Shown in pieces: positions 4,191 to 62,060 of a stretch of DNA of 64,000 nt; positions within the stretch are counted from its first letter, which is position 1, and each line of letters begins with the position of its first letter. Both the position numbers and the translations under genes were made by a program. A model generated the notes under the pieces. That model was given only the letters and a program-made list of their open reading frames with translations, had not been told where the DNA came from and did not search any database. Origin of the DNA: Macrostomum lignano (lineage: Eukaryota); NCBI GenBank assembly GCA_002269645.1, contig NIVC01000661.1, forward strand, positions 425,118 through 489,117, read 5' to 3'.

Positions 4191-20664
<16,474 letters not shown>

Positions 20665-32774: not shown

Positions 32775-35700
32775 GACTGCGGCGGCGGCGGAGATGACAG
32801 TTTTCAGCCTCTGAGACAATCTACTGATGCAATCGTACTGACAGTAGTAAATATGTTTGTGCTGAGAATATGCTGGTCACAGCTGCGGACAGTGAGTGGC
32901 AGGTGATAAACATTGGTTAAACTTTAAACCATAGTGAACATGATCTCAATGTATATCAGGTAGGGTTTCAAAGTCTATTAACCCCACAAGAAAGCAATCA
33001 TTAGTTTATGGAGATTATTGCAACATTATCACCTAGTAAGTTACATGTATAATTCTGACATAAAAACACACAGTATACAACTAATGAGATAGCCATGTCT
33101 AATAATAAATAATATAATGCCCCTATAAAAGGCTATAAAATTGGCTTAGCTATATCAAAGAGGTGATAGCTTGTTAAAAGTTATTAATTGGCTAAATTTT
33201 AATTGGCTAAACTGTTTTTAAAACCTTTTTTCAATGTCTATATTTGCTTAGCCTTTTATGCCAAACACAAATGTCTTTTGGAAAATTATTTAAATTTGTC
33301 AAGGTCCCTACTTGCTAGTCAATTATCTTTTGCCAATTTGACTACTAATAGACAAAGTTACAAATGGACATTGGACAAAATGAAAGCAAAACAAAGTTAT
33401 ATTTTTATTGGCAATGATGACTGCAACTATATTTAAAATTGCAACTTATAAGTGTATAGAAAATCAGAAACCTGAATAATATTTGTGTCAAAATATTCAA
33501 ACTTTTTAAATTCTAAAGACAAAATTAACATAATTTTTGGTAAACAGCAAGAGTAACTATGACTATATTATTAAGGCTGAAACTATATTTTCAGGTAGGC
33601 ATTTTTGTAACTTTCTTCAGCTAGGCCACTCATTAGCCATCCATATTGGCTGGGTGTTTTGTATATACGATCTATTTTAATTATCATAGGAGGTCTAGTC
33701 ATAAACATAATATAAATGTAAATAAAAAATAATATTGGCCTAATAGATAGAAAAAATGCTTATTTAGACTTACTATTTTGTATATAAACTAGAACTAGAT
33801 ATAGACAAATTGAGAATAGATGATAAACACCTACTAAATTGCAAATACTAAAATTTTTTCTATTTTATCGAATACAAAAGGCCAGGATAGAAAATTTGTA
33901 CAAAATCCTAGATGTAATCTGTGCATGCAAACAAAAACTTGCATATTTGCATATACACATTTTTGGCAACCCTATTGGAATAGGTTGACAAAACATGGAA
34001 GACTGTCCATCACATTTTTGGATTCAAGTCAAGTGGTATGTCGCCTTGCGCGACACTGTGGAAACCTGGTGTCGTCATGCGTTGCATCGCGTGACGTGAC
34101 AGTGTGGCAACTTGGTGGCTGGCATTGTCATGTGTCCCGTTGCAGCCTTGATCTGTAGCCAAAACCTCGCAAATTGTGTTTCATTGTAATATGTTCACGG
34201 TTGTTTCTTGGTATTTAAATGTTTCAAACATGTTTGATAATAACTAGTTCTTGAATTGTTCTTTTTTATTTTGACAGTAAAGTAACTAATACTTCAAATA
34301 TAATTTTTAGAAATGTTACTTGTTAGTTACAATGCATGTGCTGTTTTTTTTAAGTGTTGAACCTTTGTTGTTTTACTGTTTATTGTTTTTAAATTGCATT
34401 TCTTTTTCTACGAAATTGAAAGGAATGCTCTCATCCCTTGCCCCATGGTCTGTGTTGGGAGTGAACAGCAGAATAGGAATTGTCAATTGCAACCTGGCTG
34501 CTGTGGCATCCTCCCCCCTGGTCATTCAGTCAATAGACATTGGTGTTGCCTCATGCATTGCCACACCCCAGTCAAAAAATTTAGTGTTGTGTCGCACTTT
34601 TGAGGGCACAATTTTGGCACCCTTGTTGCACATTTGCGGGTTTTTTGAAACTTATTCCAATAGGGTTTGGCAAACTTGCATAATTATAAAAGGTTTATAT
34701 ATGTAGTGCACAGCTTTTATTTGTTCAAAAAACTTATATGATTTTATTTGAAAATGTAAAATATTACACTTGTTACATAAAAAAGTTATTGTATTTAAAA
34801 GTAAAGCCACTAAGCATTATATTAAGAAAAAAAGATAATTATAAATGTATCTTTAAATATTATTTTGTATGAAACATCTTTAAAAAGTTTTTTTGATAAA
34901 ATTTAAGAGCCAGAAAACTTGTACAGTTTAAGGTTAAAAACTTACACAAAAAAATGTGTGCCATATTTTGGAACTTGGAACTTTTGTTCTAAAAGCAAAA
35001 TTGATAGGGCCTAGGCCTATGCTATAATTCTATCCAAGAATAAGAGGTTGATAAGAATTAAAAAAGTTTATTATATTGACTTTAAATTATTTAATGATCT
35101 TTATACTAGAAACTATCATATTTGAAATCAATTAAAAAGTACAAAAATGCCCTTTATTTATTTAGGAGTTAGGAATGCTACAATACTTAATGCCTTTTCT
35201 ATAAAAAAATGTTTAATTTGTTATCATCCAAATGAAAACTAGATATATTTTAATTTAAATTGATAAAAAAAATTTTTTAAAGCAAGTGAACTACTACTAC
35301 TACTAGCATTATTTGTCATTTTAAATGGTTGAAACAAGATTACTAGATTACCAAAAGTTTCTAATAATAGTCTTGATGCTTATATTTAGCGATATCATGG
35401 CAAATAGAATCTTGTGTAAAATATTTTAATATTTTCTACAATAAGACTTAGTTGATGTTAGAGCCGTAGAGCGCTACTTTTTGAGGTCGTTTTTTAGCTT
35501 TAGGCCTTTAGCTAAAGGCCTAAAAGTCTAAAACTAAACTAGAATTTAGAAGTCAAGCTTTATAATTTTAGTTAAAATAATAGTTAGAATAAACTAGGGC
35601 AAATCGATCTATGATTTGATTTTATATGAGTAAACGAGCAAAACCAAAACTAACCAAATCTTACCTCACACTCACAGATAGAAAGACAGGCGTATTTAAC

Positions 35701-37238: not shown

Positions 37239-37432
37239 TTAAAACCTTGGCTCGACCAGGTGCACAGCTCCGCCAGTGGTGCCAACAGCCAGTTGAAGTT
37301 CGTGCACGGGCGAGAAGTCTGTGGTCACCACGCTGCTGCCGGTGCCCAGCACGGTGGCTGCGGAAGGGCAGGCGGAATATCAACAGACAGGCATTCAAAC
37401 AGACAGACAGACAGACAGACACTAAGACACTA

Positions 37433-37481
<49 letters not shown>

Positions 37482-37524
37482 CTAACACAGACAGACACTA
37501 AGACAGACAGACAAACAGACACTA

Positions 37525-37581
<57 letters not shown>

Positions 37582-37656
37582 CTAAGACAGACACTAAGAC
37601 AGACAGACACTAAGACAGACAGACAGACAGACAGACACTAAGACAGACAGACACTA

Positions 37657-37721
<65 letters not shown>

Positions 37722-39916
37722 CTAAGACAGACAGACAGACAGACACTAAGACAGACAGACAGACACCCGGACGCACCAACAGGCCGCACGGGCTCGCTGC
37801 CAGTCCGCTCCAGCCAGTCCAGCCGCCCGTTAGCGAACAATCGAACTCCCCTAGCAAACGGGGAGGCCAGAAATCGCCGGCAGCCGCTGAAGCTGATCTC
37901 TTTGATAATCTGCCGGGCGGCGATTGGCTCCTCGAACTGGCCAATGAGAGTGGAGCCTGCGGCGCCGGGCTGCAGCCAGTGCAGGTAGGTGCTGCAGCTG
38001 ACGGGCGCGGGCCCGGCAAGAAGTTGGCTAAGCCGCCACGGTTGGCTCAGGTCGATGGCGAAGCCGCGGCTGGCCACGAGGCAGCCGGACGGGTGCAGGC
38101 AGAGCGAGGATAGGCTGACCTCCTCGGTGTCCGGCCGGTCGTTGAAGCCCGAGTGCACCAGCGAGGCCAGGTTGCGGCTGAGGCCCTCGGAGCTGTCGGA
38201 GACGCGCCGCTGCAGCGCCAACAACGCAGTCTGAATATGGACGTCGGAGGCCTCTTCGTCGAGAGCGTCGGTGAGCCAGGCGTCTGGCTGGAAGTCCGGC
38301 AGGTCGCTGGCGAGGGTCTCTGGATCGAATCGGTCGATGAGCACCAGGAAGGATCGATAGGCGAGCACGAGGCGGTTGCTGTCCGGATGCAGGCGGGCCC
38401 GCATGAGCTGGCTGGTGCTCCAGGCGGGGCAGCTGTCGCTCAGCCGCAGAGTTCCAGTGTCGTAGAAAATCAGCTGATGAGGGTGCCAGCAAAAATTCTG
38501 TTTTTTGTTTGCCTAGTTGTTGCGTCCCTCCAATCTAAATGACCAGTTTAACAGTCCATGAACTAACTATTAAACCATCTTGCATGTACGTCACTCATAA
38601 GTCCATGTGAACTCCCTAAAACCCTAGCTCACTCAGATGTCCATGAACTCACTAAAACCCTAGCTCACTGAGAAGTCCATGTGAACTCCCTAAAACCCTA
38701 GCTCACTCAGATGTCCATGAACTCCCTAAAACCCTAGCTCACTGAGAAGTCCATGAACTCCCTAAAACCCTAGCTCACTGAGAAGTCCATGAACTCCCTA
38801 AAACCCTAGCTCACTCAGATGTCCATGTGAACTCCCTAAAACCCTAGCTCACTCAGATGTCCATGAACTTACTAAAACCCTAGCTCACTGAGAGTCCATG
38901 AACTCCCTAAAACCCTAGCTCACTCAGATGTCCATGAACTCCAAAAAATCGTGAAGTCCATGAACTCCCTAAAATCGTGACGTCCATGAACTACTCCCTA
39001 AAATCGTGAAGTCCATGAACTCCCTAAAATCGTGAAGTCCATGAACTCCCTAAAATCGTGAAGTCCATGAACTCCCTAAAATCGTGAAGTCCATGAACTC
39101 CCTAAAATCGTGAAGTCCATGAACTCCCTAAAATCGTGAAGTCCATGAACTCCCTAAAATCGTGAAGTCCATGAACTCCCTAAAATCGTGAAGTCCATGA
39201 ACTCCCTAAAATCGTGAAGTCCATGAACTCCCTAAAATCGTGAAGTCCATGAACTCCCTAAAATCGTGAAGTCCATAAACTCCCTAAAATCGTGAAGTCC
39301 ATAAACTCCCTAAAATCGTGAAGTCCATGAACTCCCTAAAATCGTGAAGTCCATGAACTCCCTAAATATCTCTCCAAAAACCAACCTGCGACCGGAAGCC
39401 GGACACCATGAGCAGCTGGCTGGCTGGCGCGCACTCCAGATTCTTGATGCAGCCAGCCTCGGTGCTGAGCACAGCCAGCGGGCGGCCCGGCCGCCGCAGG
39501 TCCCACACCCGGCACTGGCCGGAATCGCAGCCGGTGGCGAACACGCAGTCGCCGCCGCCAAGAAACGCGGCGACATTGACGCAGTCCTCGTGCGCGTTCC
39601 GGTTGACAAAGACCGGCCGGCCGCCGCCAACACGGAAGTCCCACCTGGCCAGGGCGCGCCTCTCGTACATGGCCAGCAAAGTGCGGCCGTCGCTGGGATG
39701 GTGCAGCACGTTGAACACGCTGCCCAGGCCGGCGTCCAAGGCTGGCCCGGCCAGTGTCAGGCCGCCAAGGAGGCTCGCTTGGACCGCCTGCGGCTGGGGC
39801 TGCTCGTAACTCCGGCATCGCAGGTGTGAGAATACTGACCGCGGCTGCAACTGCGTGTGTATGGGATTGGGGATCTCTGCGGCGCTTTTGGACGCGATTC
39901 CCCAATGAAATCCCAT
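37239..39916 (-). CDS. DCAF10: DDB1- and CUL4-associated factor 10 (WDR32)-like, exons 39386-39916 (5' end uncertain; alternative start at acceptor 39844), 37777-38473, 37239-37357
   Basis: GSVFNV, NAHEDCVN, FATGCD, WDLRR, IKNLE, LLMVSGF, LMRARLHPD, IIKEISFS...LASPF..GVRL and the C-terminus VVTTDFSP..LQLAVG..GAVHLVEPRF match DCAF10 motifs. Splice phases are consistent. Confidence 0.88.
37385..37765. repeat. Compound (GACA)n/GACACTAA microsatellite
   Basis: Makes up almost all of the last DCAF10 intron. Confidence 0.97.
38600..39362. repeat. Two-part minisatellite: ~36-bp GTCCATGAACTCCCTAAAACCCTAGCTCACTCAGAT, then 26-bp GTCCATGAACTCCCTAAAATCGTGAA
   Basis: Visible in the DCAF10 intron; the unit changes near 38940. 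Confidence 0.95.
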
Positions 39917-40275
39917 GTTGCAATGACATTCCCCATTGAAATCTGCATTCTGCAATAGCATTCCCCATTGAAATCCCCATGCTGCAATGACATTCCCCAT
40001 TGAAATCCCCATGCTGCAATGACATTCCCCATTGAAATCCCCATGCTGCAATGACATTCCCATTGAAATCTGCATTCTGCAATAGCATTCCCCATTGAAA
40101 TCCCCATGCTGCAATGACATTCCCCAATGAAATCCCCATGCTGCAATGACATTCCCCATTGAAATCTGCATTCTGCAATAGCATTCCCCATTGAAATCCC
40201 CATGCTGCAATGACATTCCCCATTGAAATCCCCATGCTGCAATAGCATTCCCCATTGAAATCCCATGCTGCAATG
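39905..40275. repeat. ~32-bp minisatellite (CATTCCCCATTGAAATCCCCATGCTGCAATGA)
   Basis: Visible; abuts the DCAF10 5' end. Confidence 0.93.
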
Positions 40276-40619
40276 ACTTTGCCCATTGATTTTATTGGCA
40301 TTTATATACTTTACACATTAGTACAAATTTCACTGACTTGTACGGAAATCATTTAATGATAAAAAATGACATTAATTCAGCAAAACCATAAATTTAAAAT
40401 ATTAAAAGGCTGATATAACTTTTATTAATTATACTACGTCTTGAATTTACATTAATTCTGTTCTAGCGAAAAACTGCTTCAGCAAGAAATGCAACAAAGT
40501 GAAACACGCATACGGCAAGCCCAAAATATTAGACAATGTACGGCTGACACTACTAACAGTAGGCGAATCGGTCGCGTATTAATAAATTGACTGAAAATTA
40601 TGAACTTTACATAGCTTGT

Positions 40620-41190
40620 TGTCCTGACCAGAACCGACCAGTCCTGACCAGAACCGACCAGTCCTGACTAGAACCGACCAGTCCTGACCAGAACCGACCA
40701 CTCCTGACCAGAACCGACAAGTCCTGACCAGAATCGACCAGTCCTGACCAGAACCGACAAGTCCTGACCAGAACTGACAAGTCCTGACCAGAATCGACCA
40801 GTCCTGACAAGAACCGACCAGTCCTGACCTGAATGGACCAATCCTGACCAGAACCGACAAGTCCTGACCAGAACCGACAAGTCCTGACCAAAACCGATCA
40901 GTCCTGACCAGAACTGATCACTCCTGACCAGAACCGACCAGTCCTGACTAGAACCGACCAGTCCTGATCAGAACCGACAAGTCCTGACCAGAATCGACCA
41001 GCCCTGACCAAAACCGATCAGTCCTGACCAGAACCGACAAGTCCTGACCAGAACTGACAAGTCCTGACCAGAATCGACCAGTCCTTACCAGAACCGACAA
41101 GTCCTGACCAAAACCGACCAGTCCTGACCAGAACCGACAAGTCCTGACCAGAACCGACAAGGATCCTGACCTGAATCGACCAGTCCTGAC
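40620..41190. repeat. 20-bp minisatellite (GTCCTGACCAGAACCGAC(C/A)A), about 28 copies
   Basis: Visible; begins just past the stop of the upstream gene. Confidence 0.95.
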
Positions 41191-41205
41191 CAGTTCATTT
41201 CTGAA

Positions 41206-44200
41206 TCAAAGCAGAGCCAATTCAACAGCCCGCAGCAGCTCTCCAGCTTCAATCGCAGCTCCATCAAGACTCTCGGCATCGCCGCCTTCATCGCCGCCAT
41301 CATCGCCGGGACTCAGCCGATAGCCGCCACGACCGGCGGCGGCGACCAATCCCAGCGCCCGGAGTCGCTCCAAATCCGCCAATTCTTCCGCGTCAACGCC
41401 GTCGCCGCCCACGGTGGCATCGGCTCCGTCAAGCAGGCGACACAGCAGCGCCGACATCCGGCGCAGCTCCGTCTGGCACAGATCGCCCAGCTGCAGCAGG
41501 CAGGCCCGACCCGCCTCCCTCACCACCAGGCTGGCAGCCGTCGGGTTCAACGCCAGATTTCTCAGCCGGAACCGCGCCGCCGCTGCCGAAGCTCCGGGAT
41601 CGTCGGCAAAAGCGGCACCGGCAGCGACGTCGGTGCCGTCCGCTCCTTCGACATCCTCGCCGGCATCGTCTTCGGATAGTCCAGAGCACCGATGGCCAGC
41701 AGGCAGTCAACCGCGGACTCGGCCAGGCTGCCGGCCACGTCCAGCTCGGCGAAGCGGGCATCGGCGGCGGACAGGCCGGCGCCGCAGGCCCGGCCAAGGA
41801 GGCGAAGCTGCGGCAGGCGATGCGCCAGACTGAGCAGCAGCGCTGAGCAAGACTCAACCAGCTGGTGCCGCAGCACGCAGCTCTGAACCGCCAGGCCCAG
41901 CTGGTTGGCCAGCAGGGCGGCCGTCAGGCAGACGGGCAGCAGGCGGTCCGCAATCGGCCGCGGCAGGAGGCGCCGGCTGCTGCCAGCTGATGACGGCGCC
42001 AACCAGGCGCGCAGAGCCGCCTCGGAGTCGTAGCTGAAGGCGAAGGCGAATCTCAGCTGGTCGGTCAGAAACGAGGCGCAGTCGTCGAGAGACTGTGGGA
42101 TATCGGGTTTTTCGGCGATAGAGAAATAACAAATAAGTTTCAAAAACTGCTACAACACAGCAAACAACTTAGCGTTCGTAGCAAACATTGAGTATCCTTT
42201 TAACTCTTTAATTAAGCAAGCCCTAGTAACCGGTTTGGCGGCCCTAGCAACTACATTTGCAGTCATAGCAACCACTTAAGTGCCTAGCAACCACTTTGAT
42301 GTCCCTAACAACCATTTTTTGCATTGATATTAATAGTAAGCATTCTGGCGCTCTAGAAACGACTTTGACGTCATTAGAAACCTCTTTAGGAGTCCTAGCA
42401 ACCACTTTGGCGTACTTAAAAACCATTTCAAAGCCTAAGACTATGCATAAACCCAGCTTTAACAGTGCTTATTCAGACACCAAGATTCCAAAAGTTGTTT
42501 GTACTCGCAGGATGAATTCATATAAAAACTCTTACGCAAAGTCCGATAGACTGGTTGCCAGCGCCCGGTCCAGAGCAACCCAGCATGAGGTCGGCAAAAT
42601 CCACCAATTGCTTGGGCATCAACGGTCGGTGAAAGTGCAGACACCACAGCAGGTGCCTGCGTAGCCGCTCCAGCGACTGTCGCGGACCGTCCGAGCTGCC
42701 GCCGCCCATCATCATCAGCCAATCGCGGAATCCGACAGCCTCGCCGAGAACCGCCGCGGCGATAGACAGCGGCCGACAATTGTCGAAGTCGTCGTCTTCA
42801 ACGGCGACAGCCAGTGAGCAGGCAACGACGTCGGGTAGCTCGCCAGACGTCAGCGCCTCGGACAGCAGGTCGAAAGCCGCATCCTGCTCGGCGTTATTGG
42901 CGTCGGCAACGTCGCCGACATGCTGATCGACAACCCACAGGAGAGTCCGGCCAGCCGCGGTCAGGTGCACCAGCGACATCAGGACGAGCTCGCCGAAGCT
43001 GGGATCATCCAGGACTAGCCGATCGAACTTCAGCACGTCGGCTGGGTTCAACGAAGACTGCGCGGGAGTCAGCAGGACGGGGCGAAGCTGGACAAGAAGC
43101 GGCGCGGCCGCGGCGAGGCCAACGCTATCGGTGACGAGGAGCAGCGGCGAGGCCGCCGACACCGAGGCGGTCAGACGGCGAAGATTTGCCAGCGAGACAG
43201 CGTCGATAAGCAGTCGGCGTTGCGGCTGGCGGCTGAAGCAGCGCGCTGTGAAGGGAGAGAGGCGGAGAGTTTTTATAGTGAACTGGCGAGCTGTCAAAGT
43301 GCGCCAGCCGTATTGACGGGCATGAGCAGTAGGAAAGGTTAAACTGACGGTGGAAATAAGGGTTTCGGCTTATAGTTGCGGTGGTAAAGAATGCAGAGAT
43401 GGGATAATGAGATACGCAAGTAGACATGGGGATGAGGGACAACATGGGGGATAAAGAGGGAGAGAGTCTGGGGACAGGCTGAGATGGGATGGAGATTGGG
43501 TGAGACAGAATGGTGATAGAATGCCATTATATTTAGGAATGAGATAGGATGGGGAGGGAATGAGATAGGATGGAAAAGGAATGAGATAAAATGGAAGGGA
43601 ATGAGATAGGATGGGGAGGGAATGAGATAGGATGGAAAAGGAATGAGATAAAATGGAAGGGAATGAGATAGGATGGAAAAGGAATGAGATAGGATGGAAA
43701 AGGAATGAGATAGGATAGGGAGGGAAGGAGAGAGGATAGGGAGGGAATGAGATAGGATGGGGAGGGAATGAGATAGGATGGGGAGGGAATGAGATAGGAT
43801 GGGGAGGGAATGAGATAGGATGGGGAGGGAATGAGATAGGATGGGGAGGGAATGAGATAGGATGGGGAGGGAATGAGATAGGATGGAAAGGGAATGAGAT
43901 AGGATGGAAAAGGAATGAGATAGGATGGAAAAGGAATGAGATAGGATAGGGAGGGAAGGAGAGAGGATAGGGAGGGAATGAGATAGGATGGGGAGGGAAT
44001 GAGATAGGATGGAAAGGGAATGAGATAAAATGGAAGGGAATGAGATAGGATGGAAAAGGAATGAGATAGGATGGAAAAGGAATGAGATAGGATAGGGAGG
44101 GAAGGAGAGAGGATAGGGAGGGAATGAGATAGGATGGGGAGGGAATGAGATAGGATGGGGAGGGAATGAGATAGGATGGGGAGGGAATGAGATAGGATGG

Positions 44201-46285
44201 GGAGGGAATGAGATAGGATGGAAAGGGAATGAGATAGGATGGAAAAGGAATGAGATAGGATGGAAAAGGAATGAGATAGGATAGGGAGGGAAGGAGAGAG
44301 GATAGGGAGGGAATGAGATAGGATGGGGAGGGAATGAGATAGGATGGAAAGGGAATGAGATAAAATGGGAAGGGAATGAGATAGGTTGCGGAGGGAATGA
44401 TAGGATAGGGAGGGAATGAGATAGGATGGGGAGGGAATGAGATAGGATGGGGAGGGAATGAGATAGGATGGGGAGGGAATGAGATAGGATGGGGAGGGAA
44501 TGAGATAGGATGGGGAGGGAATGAGATAGGATGGGGAGGGAATGAGATAGGATGGGGAGGGAATGAGATAGGATGGGGAGGGAATGAGATAGGATAGGGA
44601 GGGAATGAGATAGGATGGGGAGGGAATGAGATAGGATGGGGAGGGAAGGAGATAAAATGGGAAGGGAATTAGATAGGGTGCGGAGGGAATGATAGGATAG
44701 GGAGGGAATGAGATAGGATGGGGAGGGAATGAGATAGGATGGGGAGGGAAGGAGATAAAATGAAAAGGGAATGAGATAGGGTGCGAAGGGAATGATAGGA
44801 TAGGGAGGGAATGAGATAGGATGGGGAGGGAAGGAGATAAAATGAAAAGGGAATGAGATAGGGTGCGAAGGGAATGATAGGATAGGGAGGGAATGAGATA
44901 GGATGGGGAGGGAATGAGATAGGATGGGGAGGGAATGAGATAGGATGGGGAGGGAATGAGATAGGATGGGGAGGGAATGAGATAAAATGGGAAGGGAATG
45001 AGATAGGATGGGAAGGGAATGAGATAGGATGGAGAAGGAATGAGATAGGGTGCGGAGGAAATGAGGTGGTGGATAAAGCAACATGGTCAAGTAGACCTCA
45101 GCCGAGCGGCTGCAGCGCCCGCCCCCCAGAAGCAGTAAGCCACTCACCCAGACCGTCAGAGATCAGTCCGCCCAGCACTGACAGGCGAGCCCCGCCAGCT
45201 GCTGGCCGCTGCCCCGCCGACAGCAGCATCCGACTGACCGTGCGCCGCAGCTCCGCCTCCGCTAAGGCCAGCCTCCTCCCGAACTCGTCAGGCGACAGAG
45301 TGGCGTCCACTGCGGACACGGCGGCGGCGCCTTCGTTGGTTGCTTGGCCTCGACGAACGATTCGATGGACCCCGGCGTCGGACAGCAGGCGATCGGCAAC
45401 CTGCGACATGTCGGCCAGCTTGTCGGGTTGCTGAGCAGAATTTCCAGTCTGGGTAGCAGCGAAGGCGGCGAAGCTGTTAGCAGTGACCTCCGTCCAGACG
45501 CAACGGCAACGATGCAGCTGCTGGCCGCCAGGGGTCTGCCCGGTGGCCATCAGAGTCTGCAGGCACCGACACGAGCAAGATGGTCGGTGCTGCTCCTGTG
45601 GCGGCGGCTTCACGGGCATCGGTTGATCCTTCACGGAGCCCAGGTGATTCCTGGCAGCCTCCAGCTCGGACTCTTTCTGGCGAAGCCGTTCAAGACGGAG
45701 AGCTCGAAGGTCGCTGGCGCCGCTGCTGACCTCGGCGACTGATGGGTCCGAGGAGTTCGAAAACGCCAAAGCCGATGATGGCAAAGGCTTGAAGCCCAAG
45801 CCGGATTCTGGGTCCAGGTTCGAACTCGAACCGCCTCGGAAACCTCCTTTGTTGCCGTAACTACCGCCACCGTTTACGTAGCTCCCTCGGCTGCCGCCAT
45901 TTCCGAACCCTCCGCCACCGCCATTTCCGAACCCTCCGCCACCACCATTTCCGAACCCTCCGCCGCCGCCGCCATTTCCGAACCCTCCGCCACCACCATT
46001 TCCGAACCCTCCGCCGCCGCCGCCATTTCTGAACCCTCCGCCGCCGCCGCCATTTCCGAACCCTCCGCCACCACCATTTCCGAACCCTCCGCCGCCGCCG
46101 CCATTTCTGAACCCTCCGCCGCCGCCGCCATTTCCGAACCCTCCGCCGCCATTTCCGAACCCTCCGCCGCCATTTCCGAACCCTCCACCGCCGCCGCCAT
46201 TTCCAAACCCTCCACCGCCGCCGCCATTTCCGAACCCTCCTCGGCCGCCTCTGTTACCACTCGGTCTTGTTGAGTACTGACACCT
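41206..46285 (-). CDS. Uncharacterised ~910-aa protein: (GGGFGNG)14 Gly/Phe-rich N-terminus plus a degenerate SF2/RecQ-like region; exons 45148-46285, 42536-43245, 41206-42092 (one 1-nt frameshift near 41680; no ATG at the 5' end)
   Basis: GC-rich open frames joined by phase-consistent sites: TTTCAG|AGG, G|GTGAGT, TCACAG|CG, TGC|GTAAGA and CCACAG|TCT. The gene structure is well supported; the RecQ resemblance is only by eye. Confidence 0.7.
43540..45060. repeat. 21-bp purine-rich minisatellite (GGGAATGAGATAGGATGGGGA), about 70 copies
   Basis: Fills intron 43246-45147. Confidence 0.97.
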
Positions 46286-47559
46286 CTGAAAAGTTCAATA
46301 TAATTTCTGCTAAAAACTTTGCTTAAAACCGTGCAAAACTAATCATTCAACAGGCTAGAGATGTTCAGTTTCAACATGCTTTAAGTGTCAAGTTAGTACC
46401 CCCAGGGGGGGGGGGGCAAGTGAGCTAGTCTAAATACTAAAATAGAGCAAGGCTCTCTCTCGACTTGCAGAGCGAGCAGAAAAATTTATTGAAGCTAGAG
46501 TATCATCAAGTTATCTATATTGTGAAGTGGCATTTTCAAAGCGCAATATGCCTTGTAAATTGATCATTTGATACCTGCTTGTTTGATAGTTTTAACTTCT
46601 GCTTTTGATAGGAGGCAGCGGACCCAATGTTGATCATTTGATACAACTTGCCTAATTCTTATAGCCTTTACGACTATCAATGGAGCTGTAAGAATAAAAG
46701 CAAGTCATATCAAAATATGAGCATTAGGTTTGCCTCCTATCAAAAGCAATAACAAATTTGATGCTGAAAAATGTAAACAATATTCTCCGCAATTTTTTTC
46801 GTTAAAATCTGCCTAAAAATACCCAAGAAGCGTGTAGTTACCCGTTCTTCTACTTGAGTAGTCCTTATGGTACTTACTCGTACAAGTAATGAGTTACCAA
46901 TCAGTCAATTAAAGTTTTGTAAACTAGCTGTCATGCTATTTAAAGTGCACAATCTGTATAATTAAGCTGGCAAGCAACTTGTAATTTACTCTCCTAAAGT
47001 TTACAGAAGAAATAATTTATTATCTTAACTATTCAAAATCACTAAACGGGTAATTGGAAATGACTTTATTATAGACAGCCCATAACAAGTTAAAAGTAAA
47101 AAGAAAAACGTCAATTTACAAAATATTAACAAAGGCTTTTCCATTTCATTCATATATTTACAATTGGAGAATACAAATCTTTGCTTTGCGATGCATTTTA
47201 TTAAAATTTATTTAATGTTAACACAGATAACGCACTTTCATGTCTTTGCCGTCCAAACGCATAAGTTAAAATATCTAGGATGTTGTGTAGAATGAGCAGA
47301 GAAATCGAGAACAGTGATGAAGAAAAAATTATGCGCCACTTTCAAATCACAGCTGCGGAGAAGTTAAAACAAAAATACTGCGTGATAAGTAAGATATGAC
47401 GCGATGATTACATGCTAAGTAAATTATGTTCAAACAATTTTGATATCTGACTCTTAAAAGTAGATAATATGAAATAGATAATATGATTATAATGATGTGG
47501 GTAGTCAGCTCATTAGAGCAGACAAACGTTTCACAACCGGAAATGTCGGACAAACATCT

Positions 47560-47950
47560 TAACTGACAACTCAAACATCTGACAAACCTAGTCTGACAAC
47601 CCTAACATCCTGACAAACCTAGTCTGACAACTCAAACATCTGACAAACCTATTGTCTGAAAACTCAAACATCTGACAAACCTATTGTCTGACAACTCAAA
47701 CATCTGACAAACCTATTGTCTGACAACTCAAACAACTGACAAACCTATTGTCTGACAACTCAAACATCTGACAAACCTATTGTCTGACAACTCAAACATC
47801 TGACAAACCTATTGTCTGACAACTCAAACATCTGACAAACCTATTGTCTGACAACTCAAACATGACAAACCTATTGTCTGACAACTCAAACATCTGACAA
47901 ACCTATTGTCTGACAACTCAAACATCTGACAAACCTATTGTCTGACAATA
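47560..47950. repeat. 32-bp minisatellite (ACATCTGACAAACCTATTGTCTGACAACTCAA)
   Basis: Visible tandem units downstream of the KLHL8 stop. Confidence 0.93.
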
Positions 47951-48104
47951 ACTCGAATATATAGTAAGCCTACCGAGGTTTGACAACCTAAATACTGACA
48001 ATACTACTCCATGACAACCTAAACATAGCTGACAAACCAATCGGAATTTCTACCTAACGACAAACAACCCAAACATCCGACTGAAGAACCTCCTGAAAAC
48101 AAAA

Positions 48105-48991
48105 TCACCTCGGCAAGAAAGTCGCACCAGCAGAAGCAGTCGCAGCTGAGGCAACAACGCTGTTAGGCGATTTCAACAATCGCATCGGGATGTCGGCAAA
48201 GCACACGCCGGCTCCGGCCCGCTTCAAATTGATACCGGGCACCGGTTCCCACCGGTTGGCCACCGGGTCGAAGCATTCAACAGTGTCCAGGTAGGCCTCG
48301 CCGTCGTGCCCGCCAATTGCGTAGATCTTGCCCCACAGGGCTGCAACGCCAACGCCGCCACGGCAGGTGGTCATGGGCTGCATCCGGGTCCATTTGTCCG
48401 CCCGCGGGTCGTAGCGCTCAACCGAGTCAAGCGGCGCGTTGTCATCAAAGCCGCCAAGCACGTAGATAAAGGAGTCCAGAGCCACCGCTCCGGCGCCCGC
48501 TCGCTTGAACTCCATCGGCGCGGCCGGCTGCCACATGTTCTTCACCGGGTCGTAGCGCTCGCAGGTGGCGATGGAAGTCAGCGAGTCGTTGCCGCCGAAC
48601 ACGTAGATTTTGTCTTGGAATGCGGTGCCGCCGAGGCCGCCGCGAGGGCTGCCCATTGAGGCAACGTTGGCCCAGCTGTCGGTGACGGGGTTGTACCGCT
48701 CCACTGTGTAGAAGCAGGCGATGTCGTCAAGGCCACCCAGGCAGAACAGGCAGTCGCTGAGGGTGGCCACAGCCAGGCCGCGCCGCCTGGTTGCCATGCT
48801 GGCGATGCGGCTCCAGCGGTTGGCCAGCGGATCGAACATCTCGCCCGAGGACAGGTGCTCGTGACCGTCGTGACCGCCCACGGCGTAAACGAGGCCTGAG
48901 GTTATAAATATGATATAATATAGAATAACCCATAGACAGACAGACAGACAGACAGACACAGAAAGACAGAGAGACAGACAGACAGACAGAA

Positions 48992-49026
<35 letters not shown>

Positions 49027-50354
49027 TACTAAGACATCAAGACACTAAGACACTAAGACAGACACTAAGACAGACACTAAGACAGACACTAAGACACTAA
49101 GACAGACACTAAGACAGACAGACAGACACTCAAACAGACGGACAGAAAGACAGATAGACAGAAAGACAGACAGACAAACAGACAGACACCAAGACACTAA
49201 GACACTAAGACAGACACTAAGACAGACACTAAGACAGACACTAAGACACTAAGACAGACAGACAGACACTCAAACAGACGGACAGAAAGACAGATAGACA
49301 GAAAGACAGACAGACAAACAGACAGACACCAAGACACTAAGACACTAAGACAGACACTAAGACAGACACTAAGACAGACACTAAGACACTAAGACAGACA
49401 GACAGACACTCAAACAGACGGACAGAAAGACAGATAGACAGAAAGACAGACAGACAAACAGACAGACACCAAGACACTAAGACACTAAGACAGACACTAA
49501 GACAGACACTAAGACACTAAGACAGACAGACAGACACTCAAACAGACGGACAGAAAGACAGATAGACAGAAAGACAGACAGACAAACAGACAGACACCAA
49601 GACACTAAGAAAGACAGACAGACACTAAGACATCAAGAAAGACAGACAGACAGACACTAAGAAATGGGTGTTATATGGGTGTAATAAATAACACAAAGAC
49701 ACTAAGACAGACAGAAACTCAACACTAAGAAAGACACTAGGACAGGCATAAAGACACATGCAGACAAACGGAATATATTGGATATAACAGACTGAATGTA
49801 GAGACATAAGCGCAGACACTGGCTACCTAAGCCGATATGTATCGAAAACAGCAAAAATAAGCTTACCATTGGCCGATACGAGTCCGACGTGTCGCCGTTT
49901 AGTGTGCATCGGCTCTACGGTAATCCAGCGCTCCTCCAGCAGGTCGTACACCTCGGCATTGCGGTACGGATCGCTCAGGGTGCCCCGGCCGCCAACGCAG
50001 AAGATGCTGCCAGCGTAGGTCTTCCTCGGCCGGTAGTGCGGCAGGGCAGAAACCCGCTGCGCCACCGGCCGGTGCTTGGCCCGGTTCAGCTGGAATGCGC
50101 AGGCGTCCAGCACCAGGTCTTTGCAGGCCTGCTGGCTGTGCACCAGCGGGTCCGAGTTCACCGAGTCCATCAGGTAGTCCGATGGCAGCTGGGCTAGGCG
50201 GACGCAATGAAGCAGGCTGCGAATGATGAGGAATGCATAGGGCTGATTATCATTAACAGTCTCATCATCAGCTGGCATTCCGTTCGGGCACAGGACTGAC
50301 TGTCTGACTGACTGACTGATTGTCTGACTGACTGACTGACTAACTAACTAACTG

Positions 50355-50396
<42 letters not shown>

Positions 50397-50406
50397 AAAC
50401 TGACTC

Positions 50407-50449
<43 letters not shown>

Positions 50450-50482
50450 GACTGACTAACTAACTAACTAACAAACTGACTC

Positions 50483-50521
<39 letters not shown>

Positions 50522-50545
50522 GACTAACTAACTAACTAACTAATC

Positions 50546-50581
<36 letters not shown>

Positions 50582-52074
50582 GACTGACTCACTAACTAAC
50601 TAACTAACTAACTAACTAAGTAACTGACTCACTAACTAACTAACTAACTAATTAACTAACTGAATCACTAACTAACTGACTCACTAACTAACTAATCAAC
50701 TAACTAACTAACTAACTAACTAACTGACTAACTAACCAACCGACATTCAACCAAACTTCATAAGGTGCAACTCACTTGCTGACCAGGGCTCTCCTAACCG
50801 GCAGGTCGGCATGCACCCATTTCACAACGCTGTCAAAGACGCGCACTTCGTCGGGCACATTCAACGAATCCGACTTCAAAATGGACTGCAGCATCTCGAA
50901 TGACAGCGAGTGGAACACCTCGCTATTGACCAGCTGCTGGTAGTTCTGGCACAGGAACCTGTCAATCTCGGCAATCAGGCCAGTTCGGTTGTGCTGCTGG
51001 GCGAACATTCGAGCCTCAATGGCGTTGGAGACGTCCAGCTTGTGAGCGATGAAGCGCTCGCAGCAGTGCACCACCTCCTCTAGCTGAAGCAGGCAGGCCG
51101 TGTGCATGAGGCACTGGACATTGCCCGGCGTCACAGACAGCTGGCCAGTGTAGAAGAAATCTATCACCTTGGCAACCATCTCCTGGTCCAGGTCGTGCAG
51201 GGTCACCGACTCCATTTTCGACTCCTAATGAGGGATAGAGTGGCTGTATTGTACAATATTGACCCACTAGTTCAGATTCTGACCTTACTAGTTCTGATCC
51301 TGACCTACTAGTTCTGATTCTGACCTACTAGTTCTGATCCTGACCTACTAGTTCTGATTCTGACCTACTAGTTCTGATCCTGACCTACTAGTTCTGATCC
51401 TGACCCACTAGTTCTGATCCTGACATACTAGTTCTGATCCTGATCTACTAGTTCTGATCCTGACCTACTAGTTCTGATCCTGACCTACTAGTTCTGATCC
51501 TGGCCTACTAGTTCTGATTCTGACCTACTAGTTCTGATCCTGACCCACCAGTATTGATCCTGACCTACTAGTTCTGATACTGACCTACTAGTTCTGATCC
51601 TGACCTACTAGTTCTGATCCTGACCTACTAGTTCTGATTCTGACCTACTAGTTCTGATCCCGAACCACCTGTTCTGATTCTAACCCACCAGTTCTGATCC
51701 TGACCTACCAGTTATGATCCTGACCCACCAATTCTAGCACAAGTAAATGAATTATATTAATCTAACCTAGCTTAGAATTTCTAGTCTAAAATCAAACAGT
51801 TAACATGTGTCACCTGCATAGGCGTGGAGAACATGGCACAGAAGTAGGGACTCCAGCAGGCCAGCACAAGCCGGTGACAGGCAATCTCCTTCTGCCCAAT
51901 CTTCAGTTTCACATCGCACAAAGTCTTGGCTCTGTAGAATTCGTGCAGACACTTGAATCCATTCTCGCCGTGACTAGTAAAAGTACAAGCAGCTTCTGAG
52001 GAGTCTGCATCGTACTTGATGGTGAGATCTGGCCTAGCAGAAGCCAGCTGATCTGTTCGGGACAGGTTTGCCAT
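48105..52074 (-). CDS. KLHL8: Kelch-like protein 8 (BTB-BACK-6 kelch), 4 exons (51814-52074, 50776-51224, 49867-50216, 48105-48895), 616 aa
   Basis: BTB LCDVKLKIG..IACHRLVLA..SPYFCAMF; BACK domain; PRKTYAGSIFCVGGRG, KRRHVG, GGHDGHEHL, GGLDD..CF, GGND, GGFDDNAPL and GGHDGEAYLDTVE follow the KLHL8 pattern. Phases sum to 1851 nt. Confidence 0.92.
48933..49660. repeat. Compound (GACA)n/GACACTAA microsatellite with a higher-order ~140-bp period
   Basis: Visible in KLHL8 intron 3. Confidence 0.95.
50300..50740. repeat. (CTAA)n/(CTGA)n microsatellite
   Basis: Visible in KLHL8 intron 2. Confidence 0.97.
51270..51725. repeat. 20-bp minisatellite (TGACCTACTAGTTCTGATCC)
   Basis: Visible in KLHL8 intron 1. 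Confidence 0.95.
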
Positions 52075-52614
52075 CCAGTTAATACCACTGAATCAGTTTA
52101 GATCTGAAGTTTTATGCGATTCTGTACAAGATGGACAAATTGAATTTAGTTTTTTTTGTACCAAAAGGCATATCATGGTAAATCCAAATTTGATTGGACT
52201 TCCTCAATTTGGGCCCTGGATGCCAAATCAATACTCAGCAAAAACAGTAATATTTTGATAATTTTTTTTAACAAATGAGCTGCAATATTACTACAGGAGT
52301 CTATATTTGATGCTTTTCAAAAATTACATTGCTAATTTTGTAGGTTTCTCAGCAAATAATTGATTGCTTTTGCTCTGTCAACCCAATTAAGCTAAAACTT
52401 TAGCACTGAACTCATTAGATATAAGCTCAGGTTTGTGTAAATTTTTATAAAAATCAATTGAATTGATGCAGAGATAGTAGGGGTGTCTAAGAACTTTTTG
52501 GATGCACTAAGGTAATATAAATTAAAATTGAAATTGTAATTATCATTATACAAAATATACACATAACACATGCGCAACCTAGGGATTCACTTATCTATTT
52601 CTTAGGCAACATAC

Positions 52615-57489: not shown

Positions 57490-58740
57490 TATCAACGAGG
57501 TGGCGCAGGTGGCTGTGCCGATGGCGCTGACGCTCGAGGACATCCGCAAGAGCTCTGCCAGCGACCCAGTCATCCGGGTGGCGATAGCGGCGACGCAAGG
57601 CGGCCGGTGGGATCACTCCAACGCAGAGATACGTTCGCTCCACGCGCTGCGAGAGGAGCTGTCTGTGGCGGACGGGGTCCTCCTTCGGCACCAGTGAATC
57701 GTCGTGCCAGCTGAGCTGCGGCAGCAGATGCTCGAACTGGCACACCAAGGGCAACAGTGCTCGCAGAAGACGATCGCGAGGCTCGCCACAAAGGTCTGGT
57801 GGCCGAGAATGGCAACTTAATAGGAGGAGTTCGTCAGTCGATGCCGCAGCTGCGCCGCACACACCACCGTCCGGGCCACGCCTCTGCGGGCGCCTGGCTG
57901 TCGATCGGCGCCGATTTCGTGGGACCGCTACTCGAAGTTCCCGGTGGTGCAGCTCATGCAGACGACGACGGCTGAGGCATTGATTCTCCGCCTACGAGAG
58001 ATGTTCGCTTGCTTCGGGATCCTGCAGGAGCTCGTGACAGACAATGGACCGCCCTTCTCGTCCAAGGATTCGGCCGGTTCCTGGCGAGCTACGCGATCAA
58101 GCATTGCCTCATCACGCCCTACTACCTAGCGGCCAACGGCATGAAGGAGCGGCTGAACCGCTCCATCAACAAAGTCGTGCGCGCAGCCATCGAGGAGCGG
58201 CGAGACTGGAGGGCTGCTCTGGACGAGTGGCTGCTGGCCTACAGGAACACGCCGCACACGGCTACCGGGCGCGCACCAGCCGAGCTGCTAATGGGCCGGC
58301 GGCCAAATGACGTCATTCCCGCCGCCCGGCCCTCCAAGCGAGTCCGCATCGACGAGCAGCGGCTAAGAGACGCGGACGCCGGCGCCAAGGCGGCGATGAA
58401 GCAGCACGCGGACGCAAAAAGGCGACCACGGCGGCACAACGTCCAGGTCGGCGACTCGGTGCTACGACGGCGGGTCGGTGCCAGCAAGACGCAGACGCCG
58501 TTCTAGAACGCTGCCTGGGCGGTCCAGCGGGTGGCCGGCAACTCGCTGCTGCTACGCCGGGATGGCACAACCCGCTGGCGGCAGCCCCGACTTGGTCGAC
58601 GCCATCGCCCAGCCGCAAACCGCTGCACTAAGAGCTCCAGGCGAGGCCAACCGAGACCCACCCGTCTCCCTGCTGGCGCTGCGCCCGCACCCGCGCTGCT
58701 CGGAGCGGCGTGAAAATCTACAAGGACTGAATTTTTTATC
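57490..58740 (+). mobile_element. Degenerate Ty3/Gypsy pol fragment (integrase zinc-binding domain and core)
   Basis: LELAHQG...VWWP...CRSC; GADFVGP; LVTDNGPPFSS; NGMKERLNR; LLAYRNTPHTATGRAPAELLMGR; several stops and frameshifts. Confidence 0.92.
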
Positions 58741-61900: not shown

Positions 61901-62060
61901 TCGACCTAGAAGATTCACTCTGTCTCCCTTCACAACAAGCGCAGTCAGTTGATACTGTCTTTCCTGATAGTTAGTTACGGTAACAGCAGCTTCGCCCAGA
62001 ACTGGTATGAGATGATCTGTGTAGCTTGACAGTCTAACATTAGATTTAGACCAGCTTAAG
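58879..62060 (-). mobile_element. Ty3/Gypsy LTR retrotransposon, 5'-truncated and pseudogenised (partial protease, RT, RNase H, integrase, PPT, 3' LTR)
   Basis: NLLGRDWL; ASPIVPVLK..VRICVDFK..VN; FSKLDISQAFLQ; YIDD; LQTDSSKYGIG; NYSQLEKEALAI; SDNGSQF; NGLSERMV. Frameshift near 61225, a stop near 61145 and a second frameshift near 59620. Confidence 0.95.

What the first reader, a model, noticed from the sequence alone, without database searches (positions are those of the whole stretch)
46260..46310. Gene with no start codon: exon begins in frame at a splice acceptor, and the AUG may come from a trans-spliced leader
Seen: the frame of exon 45148-46285 is closed by TGA three codons upstream of the acceptor junction (TGA ACT TTT CAG|AGG TGT CAG). 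The first in-frame ATG is 222 codons in (45619). About 14 out-of-frame ATGs in strong context (GAAATGG) come before it and lead to a stop at 45874. I found no convincing upstream coding exon in 46300-48100. Established: flatworm spliced leaders end in AUG, and that AUG can act as the initiator Met. Inference: trans-splicing here would give M-RCQYSTRPSGNRGGRGGF..., so translation of the gene would depend on trans-splicing.
Basis: partly seen in the sequence, partly recalled or inferred. Interest (0 to 1): 0.75.

Follow-up and report, generated by a model that had tools for sequence, protein, structure and literature searches.

The report
Flatworm gene started by spliced leader
This is a gene of the flatworm Macrostomum lignano whose long reading frame has no start codon of its own and most likely takes its AUG from the trans-spliced leader, a mechanism known in flatworms since 2006, so it is a good but ordinary example.

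Summary
On the minus strand an open frame starts at the acceptor TTTTCAG|AGG (46286/46285). It is closed 9 nt upstream by TGA, has no in-frame ATG for 222 codons, and carries 14 out-of-frame ATGs before that.

The window is 100% identical to Macrostomum lignano assembly Mlig_3_7, contig NIVC01000661.1. The gene is GenBank PAA78896.1, "BOX15_Mlig005743g3, partial". The published M. lignano spliced leader ends in ATG and joins in frame, giving M-RCQYSTRPSGN.

The copy on a second contig (Mlig005743g1, PAA55401.1) has a Met-less partial CDS whose first codon is exactly the first codon after the same acceptor. All three neighbouring genes on that contig begin 0-1 nt after a CAG acceptor. The annotation pipeline set 5' ends from leader-containing reads.

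The next gene downstream (DCAF10-like, Mlig005743g4) shows the same pattern at 39850 and belongs to the same transcriptional unit.

I could not inspect leader-junction reads or protein N-termini, so use of the leader AUG is inferred. The mechanism is established (Cheng et al. 2006). This is a new member of a known kind and of modest interest.

The window copy also has a 1-nt frameshift near 41675 relative to the second copy.

The parts
46286..46292 (-). 3' splice acceptor TTTTCAG, the proposed spliced-leader trans-splice site. It fits the M. lignano trans-acceptor motif [T/C]TNCAG.
   Evidence: Motif from PMC8629364. The acceptor is conserved in the second copy, where the annotated CDS starts at the next base.
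46295..46297 (-). In-frame TGA in the outron, three codons upstream of the junction. It closes the frame in genomic DNA.
   Evidence: Conserved in the second copy.
45148..46285 (-). Exon 1 of Mlig005743g3 (379 codons plus 1 base). It starts RCQYSTRPSGNRGG, has no in-frame ATG for 222 codons, and ends at donor CTGG|GTGAGT.
   Evidence: The unique part is 100% identical between the two copies, against 93-97% for flanking non-coding DNA.
45884..46249 (-). Coding minisatellite (units of 21-27 nt) encoding GGFGNGGGG repeats. There are 14 units here and 10 in the second copy. The length difference is a multiple of 3.
45874..46227 (-). Overlapping +1-frame ORF (MAAAVEGLEM..., 117 codons then TAA) holding all 14 out-of-frame ATGs in GAAATGG context.
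45617..45619 (-). First in-frame ATG of the gene (codon 223, ...DQPMPVKPPP). This is the alternative start site.
43246..45147 (-). Intron 1 (GTGAGT...CACAG), mostly a 21-bp minisatellite (43536-45065).
42536..43245 (-). Exon 2. The junction reads ...LISDGL|ARCFSRQ... and the codon-position GC pattern is coding-like.
42093..42535 (-). Intron 2 (GTAAGA...CCCACAG).
   Evidence: 92.8% identity between copies.
41562..42092 (-). Exon 3 coding part in this copy. The junction reads ...SIGLC|SLDDC... and the stop is TGA at 41564-41562.
41674..41676 (-). 1-nt deletion in a C run (CC here, CCC in the second copy). It shifts the frame and truncates this copy.
41206..41673 (-). C-terminal coding sequence that the second copy reads through (…EDDAGEDV…ELALL, stop 41208-41206). 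It is out of frame in this copy.
46293..47216 (-). Probable outron and intergenic DNA between the poly(A) signals of the upstream KLHL8-like gene (47216, 47202, 47070, 47021) and the acceptor. It is AT-rich with no coding signal.
   Evidence: The extent is inferred.
39386..39850 (-). First exon of the next gene, DCAF10-like WD40 protein Mlig005743g4. It begins at acceptor ACACGCAG|TTG in phase 0 with no in-frame ATG for 61 codons. It is the second leader-AUG candidate in the same transcriptional unit.
48105..52087 (-). Upstream KLHL8-like gene (BTB-BACK-Kelch, 616 aa, own ATG at 52074, stop 48107-48105). The likely trans-splice site is GATTCAG|T at 52087, where the leader AUG is out of frame (MWY-stop).

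Best explanation
The window is Macrostomum lignano DNA. Exon 1 of gene Mlig005743g3, an orphan protein with a glycine-rich N-terminus, begins at a spliced-leader trans-splice acceptor at 46286/46285. The pre-mRNA upstream of it (the outron, which holds an in-frame TGA) is discarded. The 35-nt leader, which ends in ...UUGCAUG, is joined to AGGUGUCAG. The leader's terminal AUG becomes codon 1 of a roughly 792-codon frame (877 codons in the intact second copy): M-RCQYSTRPSGNRGGRGGFGN...

It is the first AUG on the mature mRNA and the only in-frame AUG before codon 223. Fourteen out-of-frame AUGs lie between those two points, so production of the full-length protein depends on trans-splicing.

Shown here: organism, exon structure, frame relations, and a transcript model that ends at the acceptor in the second copy. 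Inferred: that the 5' end reflects leader addition at this exact site, and that ribosomes start at the leader AUG.
For: Organism and gene
- The spliced product found one protein among 1.84 billion representatives, at 100% identity. It is PAA78896.1, BOX15_Mlig005743g3, partial [M. lignano].
- Its locus is identical to the window.

Leader
- The M. lignano leader ends in ATG and the trans-acceptor motif is [T/C]TNCAG (PMC8629364). The site here is TTTTCAG.
- All reported flatworm leaders end in AUG (PMC12582326).
- The leader AUG serves as initiator in vivo, is in frame in 28% of S. mansoni trans-spliced mRNAs, and is required by more than 40 cDNAs (Cheng 2006, as cited in PMC9851317 and PMC3510090).
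- The Macrostomum leader ATG is flagged as a likely start codon in PMC10468722.

Transcript 5' end
- The second copy, PAA55401.1, starts RCQYSARPSGN, the first base after the acceptor, with no Met.
- On that contig all three genes' partial CDSs start 0-1 nt after a CAG acceptor. I estimate the chance of that at roughly 1e-4.
- The annotation pipeline, TBONE, sets 5' ends from leader-containing reads (PMC5730564).

Frame
- Leader plus exon reads ATG AGG TGT... in frame.

Conservation
- The 260 unique nt before the first ATG are 100% identical between copies, like the other coding exons. The 313 nt upstream of the acceptor are 96.8% identical and intron 2 is 92.8%.

Second case
- The DCAF10-like gene in the same transcriptional unit starts LQPRSVF... 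right after ACACGCAG|, in phase 0. Two independent annotations agree.
Against: - No leader-junction read, cDNA or peptide was seen here.
- The model annotated on the window copy itself starts 21 nt downstream (PSGN..., 46264) and skips 273 nt of the repeat. It looks like a transcript from another copy projected onto this locus, so the exact-acceptor evidence comes from the second copy only.
- An open frame over the 86 unique pre-ATG codons arises in 19% of shuffles.
- The repeat is open in two of the three frames, so it says little about which frame is coding.
- Zero differences between copies gives no dN/dS. It could reflect gene conversion rather than protein-level selection.
- The leader AUG has U at -3 and A at +4. 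That is a weak context by vertebrate rules, whereas the next AUGs are in a strong context.
- This copy carries a frameshift near 41675 and may be decaying.
- Flatworm acceptors can be shared between cis- and trans-splicing (PMC12582326).
Confidence: 0.66

Rival explanations
1. The mRNA is trans-spliced (or simply starts) at 46285, but translation begins at the first internal in-frame AUG (45619, MPVKPPP...). The glycine-rich region would then be a long 5' UTR.
For: - 45619 is the first genomic in-frame ATG.
- Openness of the unique pre-ATG segment is not statistically strong, at 19% of shuffles.
- The leader AUG context is weak.
Against: - A scanning ribosome meets the leader AUG first, then 14 strong-context AUGs in another frame (10 in the second copy), before reaching 45619.
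- The pre-ATG segment is as conserved as coding exons.
- The frame is open from the very first base after the acceptor, and the acceptor is in phase 0.
Confidence: 0.15
2. An unannotated cis exon in 46286-48104 carries the ATG and is spliced to 46285. The transcript models are merely 5'-incomplete.
For: - Phase-0 candidates exist: ATG 47262 or 47241 to donor AAA|GTGCGT at 47236, and ATG 46637 to donor CAG|GTATCA at 46575.
- Some models in this annotation are 5'-truncated. The window copies of both genes start about 21-24 nt inside the exon.
Against: - The candidate donors are weak (5.9 and 4.2 bits, against 8.8 for the real donor).
- The first candidate lies upstream of the KLHL8 poly(A) signals.
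- The region is AT-rich with no coding signal.
- Spliced reads would have linked such an exon in a genome-guided assembly.
- Three of three neighbouring models on the second contig end exactly at acceptors.
Confidence: 0.08
3. The +1-frame ORF (MAAAVEGLEM..., 46227-45874) is the product made from the 5' part of the mRNA, or the window copy is a decaying duplicate whose translation is irrelevant.
For: - The +1 ATGs are in a strong GAAATGG context.
- The +1 frame has a coding-like GC1/2/3 pattern (0.77/0.55/0.70).
- The window copy has a frameshift near 41675 and more differences downstream of it.
Against: - The +1 frame stops before the unique region. Only frame 0 continues through three exons.
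- The second copy is intact, at 876 aa.
- The GC pattern inside a Gly/Ala repeat is not diagnostic.
Confidence: 0.06
4. Exon 46285 is an alternative 3' exon of the upstream KLHL8-like gene, used through the donor CCGAG|GTGATT that overlaps its stop codon (48108/48107).
For: A GT follows the last sense codons of KLHL8. Both genes are on the same strand.
Against: - The join would read the +1 frame and stop at 45874, leaving three exons as 3' UTR.
- KLHL8 is complete, with all six Kelch blades and its own stop.
- The two genes carry different transcriptional-unit names in the annotation, Mlig026592 and Mlig005743.
Confidence: 0.02

Closest known systems
Flatworm mRNAs that take their initiator methionine from the 3'-terminal AUG of the spliced leader (Cheng, Cohen, Ndegwa and Davis 2006, J Biol Chem 281:733; Schistosoma mansoni; also described for Echinococcus granulosus, PMC3510090)
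   Same: - The leader ends in AUG.
- The acceptor is in phase 0 with the main ORF.
- There is no in-frame AUG near the 5' end of the ORF.
- An in-frame stop lies in the discarded outron.
   Different: - The species is the free-living macrostomid M. lignano.
- The distance to the next in-frame AUG is unusually long, at 222 codons.
- Fourteen out-of-frame AUGs in a coding minisatellite lie in between.
- There is no experimental proof for this gene.
M. lignano trans-spliced genes and operon-like transcriptional units (Wudarski et al. 2017, PMC5730564; Ustyantsev and Berezikov 2021, PMC8629364)
   Same: - The acceptor motif is YTNCAG.
- The genes are adjacent on the same strand.
- Gene A (g3) and the DCAF10-like gene (g4) share the unit name Mlig005743.
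- The spacer between them is mostly tandem repeats, as described for M. lignano operons.
   Different: Those papers do not discuss which genes need the leader AUG. GenBank simply labels such proteins 'partial'.
slORFs: reading frames created by leader-borne start codons in nematodes, Oikopleura and trypanosomes (slORFfinder, PMC9851317)
   Same: The start codon is supplied in trans by the leader.
   Different: There most cases use near-cognate codons and often give alternative frames. Here a canonical AUG opens the main conserved frame.

Membership tests
Flatworm mRNA initiated at the spliced-leader AUG | The organism has an SL RNA whose leader exon ends in AUG. | tested here: met
   The window is identical to M. 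lignano Mlig_3_7 NIVC01000661.1. The leader CGGTCTCTTACTGCGAAGACTCAATTTATTGCATG is given in PMC8629364. No SL RNA gene lies in the window itself.
Flatworm mRNA initiated at the spliced-leader AUG | The leader is joined to the mRNA at this 3' splice acceptor. | tested here: inconclusive
   Indirect evidence only. The second copy's Met-less CDS starts at the first base after TTTTCAG. All three models on that contig start at CAG acceptors. The pipeline uses leader reads to set 5' ends (PMC5730564). No junction reads could be inspected.
Flatworm mRNA initiated at the spliced-leader AUG | The leader AUG is in frame with the main ORF. | tested here: met
   Leader plus exon 1 gives MRCQYSTRPSGNRGG..., continuous with exons 2 and 3.
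Flatworm mRNA initiated at the spliced-leader AUG | No usable in-frame AUG of the gene's own at or near the start of the ORF. | tested here: met
   The first in-frame ATG is codon 223. The TGA lies 9 nt upstream of the junction. Fourteen out-of-frame ATGs lie in between. The second copy is the same.
Flatworm mRNA initiated at the spliced-leader AUG | The protein N-terminus or ribosome initiation maps to the leader AUG. | not testable with these tools
   No ribosome profiling or proteomics for M. lignano was available.
M. lignano operon-like transcriptional unit resolved by trans-splicing | Adjacent same-strand genes in one transcriptional unit, with the downstream gene starting at a trans-splice acceptor and a repeat-adjusted spacer under 1 kb. 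| tested here: met
   - Gene A is Mlig005743g3 and the DCAF10-like gene is Mlig005743g4. On the second contig they are g1 and g2.
- The downstream CDS starts at ACACGCAG|TTG.
- From the paralog-type stop (41206) to the acceptor (39850) is about 1,355 nt, of which about 966 nt are tandem repeats.
- From the last poly(A) signal (40296) to the acceptor is about 445 nt, of which 393 nt are repeat.

The most novel reading that the evidence does not exclude
Dependence on the leader AUG may be common in M. lignano: two of three adjacent genes here need it. A sizeable share of GenBank proteins labelled 'partial' could then be complete once the leader Met is added.

In this gene the arrangement could also act as a switch. 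The first AUG is the weak-context leader AUG in frame 0. It is followed by 14 strong-context AUGs in frame +1 inside a minisatellite that is open in both frames. Initiation at the leader AUG would give the glycine-rich protein. Leaky scanning would give a 117-residue Ala/Glu-rich peptide from the same repeat.
Probability: 0.1. Interest if true: 0.5.

Novelty: new member of a known kind. Interest (0 to 1): 0.3.

Why it matters
It is a clean, extreme example of a gene whose protein can only be made after trans-splicing. There are 222 codons and 14 decoy AUGs before the first AUG of its own.

It also shows a practical annotation problem. In M. lignano GenBank records such genes appear as "partial" proteins without a Met, because the leader is trimmed before ORF calling. 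Adding the leader AUG would complete them.

M. lignano can be made transgenic, so the case is directly testable. It does not change what is known about the mechanism.

Tried and rejected
**Protein homology searches.** I queried exon pieces, the KLHL8 C-terminus and a gypsy pol. None gave a close hit, and I first took this to mean the species was absent from the database. The listed hits never exceeded about 1.75 times the query length (460 aa for a 263-aa query, 846 aa for a 483-aa query). The full-length proteins were probably just not listed. The exhaustive representative search with the spliced product then found the gene at once.

**SL RNA gene in the window.** Rfam at gathering threshold and a tRNA scan found nothing. 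Searches for the leader sequence found nothing in the window.

**Codon-position GC in the repeat.** It could not tell frame 0 from frame +1.

**DCAF10-like start.** I first thought this gene might start at an ATG inside the 32-bp minisatellite (about 39915). The annotation of both copies puts its 5' end at the acceptor at 39850 instead.

**Frameshift position.** I first placed it near 41565 from GC3. Alignment with the second copy puts it at about 41675.

**Function of the protein.** There is no Pfam or PDB hit. An AlphaFold single-sequence model had mean pLDDT 38.9, too poor for a fold search, so none was run.

**Literature.** Gene-level trans-splicing tables were not available: Mlig005743 appears in no held paper or supplement. 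Wasik 2015 and Cheng 2006 are not held and are cited second-hand.
Full report
**1. The observation**

The gene lies on the minus strand. Reading 46400 down to 45100 gives ...TGA ACT TTT CAG|AGG TGT CAG TAC TCA.... The TGA is at 46297-46295 and the first exon base at 46285. The frame then stays open for 379 codons, up to a strong donor CTGG|GTGAGT at 45148/45147.

A census of ATGs in the exon gives 14, all in the +1 frame and all in GAAATGG context (46227 to 45900). That frame ends at TAA 45876-45874. The first in-frame ATG is at 45619, codon 223.

The 14 ATGs sit in a coding minisatellite (45884-46249, units of 21-27 nt) that encodes GGFGNGGGG repeats.

**2. Is it a real exon?**

- The donor at 45148 (phase 1) joins in frame to an acceptor with a long pyrimidine tract (...CTCTCCCTTCACAG|CG, exon 2 = 43245-42536).
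- Exon 2 ends at TGC|GTAAGA (phase 0) and joins CCCACAG|TCT (exon 3 from 42092).
- Exons 2 and 3 have the codon-position GC pattern of the confident genes in the window: GC2 lowest, GC3 0.75-0.86.
- The unique part of exon 1 (243 codons) is stop-free in only 1% of dinucleotide shuffles. The 86 unique codons before the first ATG alone are stop-free in 19%.

**3. Which organism and which gene?**

Three word-indexed protein searches gave only hits of about 50% identity. In hindsight that tool listed nothing longer than about 1.75 times the query, so full-length proteins were missed.

The exhaustive search with my spliced product (640 aa) found exactly one protein among 1.84 billion representatives, at 100% identity. 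It is PAA78896.1, [quoted passage not shown]. Its locus, GCA_002269645.1 contig NIVC01000661.1:456679-481381, is identical to the window over 24,703 bases. The GenBank protein confirms my exon joins and the stop at 41564-41562.

The protein has no Pfam or PDB relative and no relative outside its own cluster. It is an orphan. An AlphaFold model predicts a disordered glycine-rich N-terminus followed by helices, but confidence is too low to use (pLDDT 38.9).

**4. The spliced leader**

- The M. lignano leader is CGGTCTCTTACTGCGAAGACTCAATTTATTGCATG.
- Its trans-acceptor motif is [T/C]TNCAG, and about 30% of genes are trans-spliced (PMC8629364).
- All reported flatworm leaders end in AUG (PMC12582326).
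- The leader AUG can act as initiator in vivo. In S. mansoni it is in frame in 28% of trans-spliced mRNAs and is needed by more than 40 cDNAs (Cheng et al. 2006, as cited in PMC9851317 and PMC3510090).
- Joining the leader to 46285 gives ATG AGG TGT CAG..., in frame: MRCQYSTRPSGNRGG....
- A second AG 9 nt downstream (GTCAG|TAC, 46276) is also in phase 0.

**5. Evidence that the mRNA really starts at the acceptor**

M. lignano is a recent polyploid, and a second copy of the locus lies on contig NIVC01002759.1. Its protein, PAA55401.1 (Mlig005743g1, partial, 876 aa), begins RCQYSARPSGN. The annotated CDS starts at the first base after the conserved ...TGAACTTTTCAG acceptor and has no Met.

A 5'-partial CDS starts at the first complete codon of its transcript. 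The in-frame TGA lies only 9 nt upstream in the genome. The transcript model must therefore begin within 0-2 nt of the acceptor.

The same holds for the two neighbours on that contig:

| Gene on NIVC01002759.1 | Acceptor and first bases | First residues |
|---|---|---|
| KLHL8-like | GATTCAG\|T GGT | GINWMANLS |
| Gene A (Mlig005743g1) | CTTTTCAG\|AGG | RCQYSARPS |
| DCAF10-like | ACACGCAG\|TTG | LQPRSVFAH |

. Three of three 5' ends falling on CAG acceptors has a chance probability of roughly 1e-4 by my estimate.

The annotation pipeline (TBONE) cuts transcriptional units at peaks of leader-containing reads (PMC5730564). This is strong but indirect evidence for trans-splicing at 46285.

The models projected on the window copy start 21 nt (gene A, PSGN, 46264) and 24 nt (DCAF10-like, HLRC, 39826) inside the exon. 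In both cases this is just past a single-base difference from the other copy, and the gene A model also skips 273 nt of the repeat. These look like transcripts of the other copy aligned here.

**6. Constraint on the part before the first ATG**

| Segment | Length | Identity between copies |
|---|---|---|
| Upstream of the acceptor | 313 nt | 96.8% |
| Intron 2 | about 443 nt | 92.8% |
| Exon 1, unique part before the first ATG | 260 nt | 100% |
| Exon 1, after the first ATG | 472 nt | 100% |
| Exon 2 | 710 nt | 100% |

. The pre-ATG segment behaves like coding sequence, not like flanking DNA. With zero differences no dN/dS can be computed, and gene conversion cannot be excluded.

The repeat has 14 units here and 10 in the other copy. 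The difference is 105 nt, so the frame is kept.

**7. Surroundings**

- *Upstream, same strand.* A complete KLHL8-like gene: BTB-BACK-Kelch, 616 aa, ATG at 52074, stop at 48107-48105. My reconstruction matches PAA78897.1 exactly. It has poly(A) signals at 47216-47021. At its 5' acceptor (52087) the leader AUG is out of frame and gives MWY-stop before the gene's own ATG.
- *Downstream, same strand.* A DCAF10-like WD40 gene (Mlig005743g4, PAA78895.1). From the acceptor at 39850 it encodes 426 aa starting LQPRSVFSH, with no in-frame ATG for 61 codons. This is exactly UniRef A0A1I8H2Z6 from an independent annotation. The leader AUG is again in frame.
- *Shared unit.* Gene A and this gene share the unit name Mlig005743 on both contigs (g3/g4 and g1/g2). 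They were cut from one transcriptional unit. The spacer between them is mostly two minisatellites, as described for M. lignano operons.

**8. Alternatives**

- A cis exon carrying the ATG cannot be excluded from sequence alone. The candidates are weak and none is in the annotation.
- Initiation at codon 223 would require ribosomes to pass the leader AUG and 14 strong-context AUGs.
- The +1 ORF stops before the unique region.
- A KLHL8 read-through isoform would read the +1 frame.

I put about 0.8 on trans-splicing at this acceptor. I put about 0.66 on the full claim that the leader AUG is the functional start.

**9. Verdict**

The mechanism has been known in flatworms since 2006, and the Macrostomum leader ATG has already been noted as a likely start codon. 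This is therefore a new, well-documented member of a known kind. It is also a pointer to a systematic "partial protein" artefact in the M. lignano annotation.

The window copy additionally carries a 1-nt deletion in a C run at about 41675. This truncates it relative to the other copy.

Noticed in passing
window 39386-39856 (minus strand): The next gene (DCAF10-like WD40, Mlig005743g4) also has a Met-less ORF. It begins in phase 0 at an acceptor (ACACGCAG|TTG, 39850), and the first in-frame ATG is 61 codons in. With the leader it would read MLQPRSVFSH... It shares a transcriptional-unit name with gene A, so the pair looks like an operon.
   Followed up: yes
window 52074-52095 (minus strand): The 5' end of the KLHL8-like gene (inferred from the second copy's partial CDS) is at acceptor GATTCAG|T, 52087. 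Here the leader AUG is out of frame and opens a 3-codon uORF (MWY-stop) just before the gene's own ATG at 52074.
   Followed up: partly
window 41674-41676 (minus strand): A 1-nt deletion in a C run relative to the copy on NIVC01002759.1 shifts the frame. This copy stops at 41564-41562, whereas the other reads on to the equivalent of 41208-41206. Six of the seven substitutions between copies in exon 3 lie downstream of the shift. It could be a real decaying duplicate or a long-read assembly error.
   Followed up: partly
window 46264 and 39826; 45884-46249: The GenBank models on this contig start 21 and 24 nt inside the first exons, just past a single-base difference from the other copy. The gene A model also skips 273 nt (91 codons) of the repeat. 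These are probably transcripts of another copy projected onto this locus.
   Followed up: partly
window 37382-37765, 38591-39366, 39897-40289, 40621-41193, 43536-45065, 47549-47948, 48934-49662, 50327-40740 region 50327-50740, 51260-51725: Almost every intron and intergenic spacer in this stretch holds its own, different mini- or microsatellite (periods of 4 to 36 bp, up to 1.5 kb). Several are open in all frames and produce long spurious ORFs.
   Followed up: no
window 45148-45879, 42536-43245 versus flanks (L001/L002): The exons are 100% identical between the two contigs, including synonymous sites, while introns and spacers are 93-97% identical. That is more conservation than protein-level selection alone predicts.
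   Followed up: no
window 59598-62521 (minus), 58009-58506 (plus), 24611-25744 (minus): Transposon remains are present: gypsy-type RT/RNase H/integrase ORFs (best database hits about 50% identity), an integrase fragment on the other strand, and a 377-aa ORF with a zinc-finger N-terminus that looks transposase-like. The last identification is by eye only.
   Followed up: partly
window 6600-20751 and 30374-32819 (minus strand): Further host genes, all on the minus strand: a La-related (LARP-like) gene with its own ATG at 20664 and a WD40 gene with its own ATG at 32774. Together with the three genes studied, all five host genes recognised in the window point the same way.
   Followed up: no
tool behaviour: the search for homologous proteins listed no hit longer than about 1.75 times the query (460 aa for 263, 846 aa for 483). 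Exon-sized queries therefore miss full-length proteins, including the window's own.
   Followed up: partly
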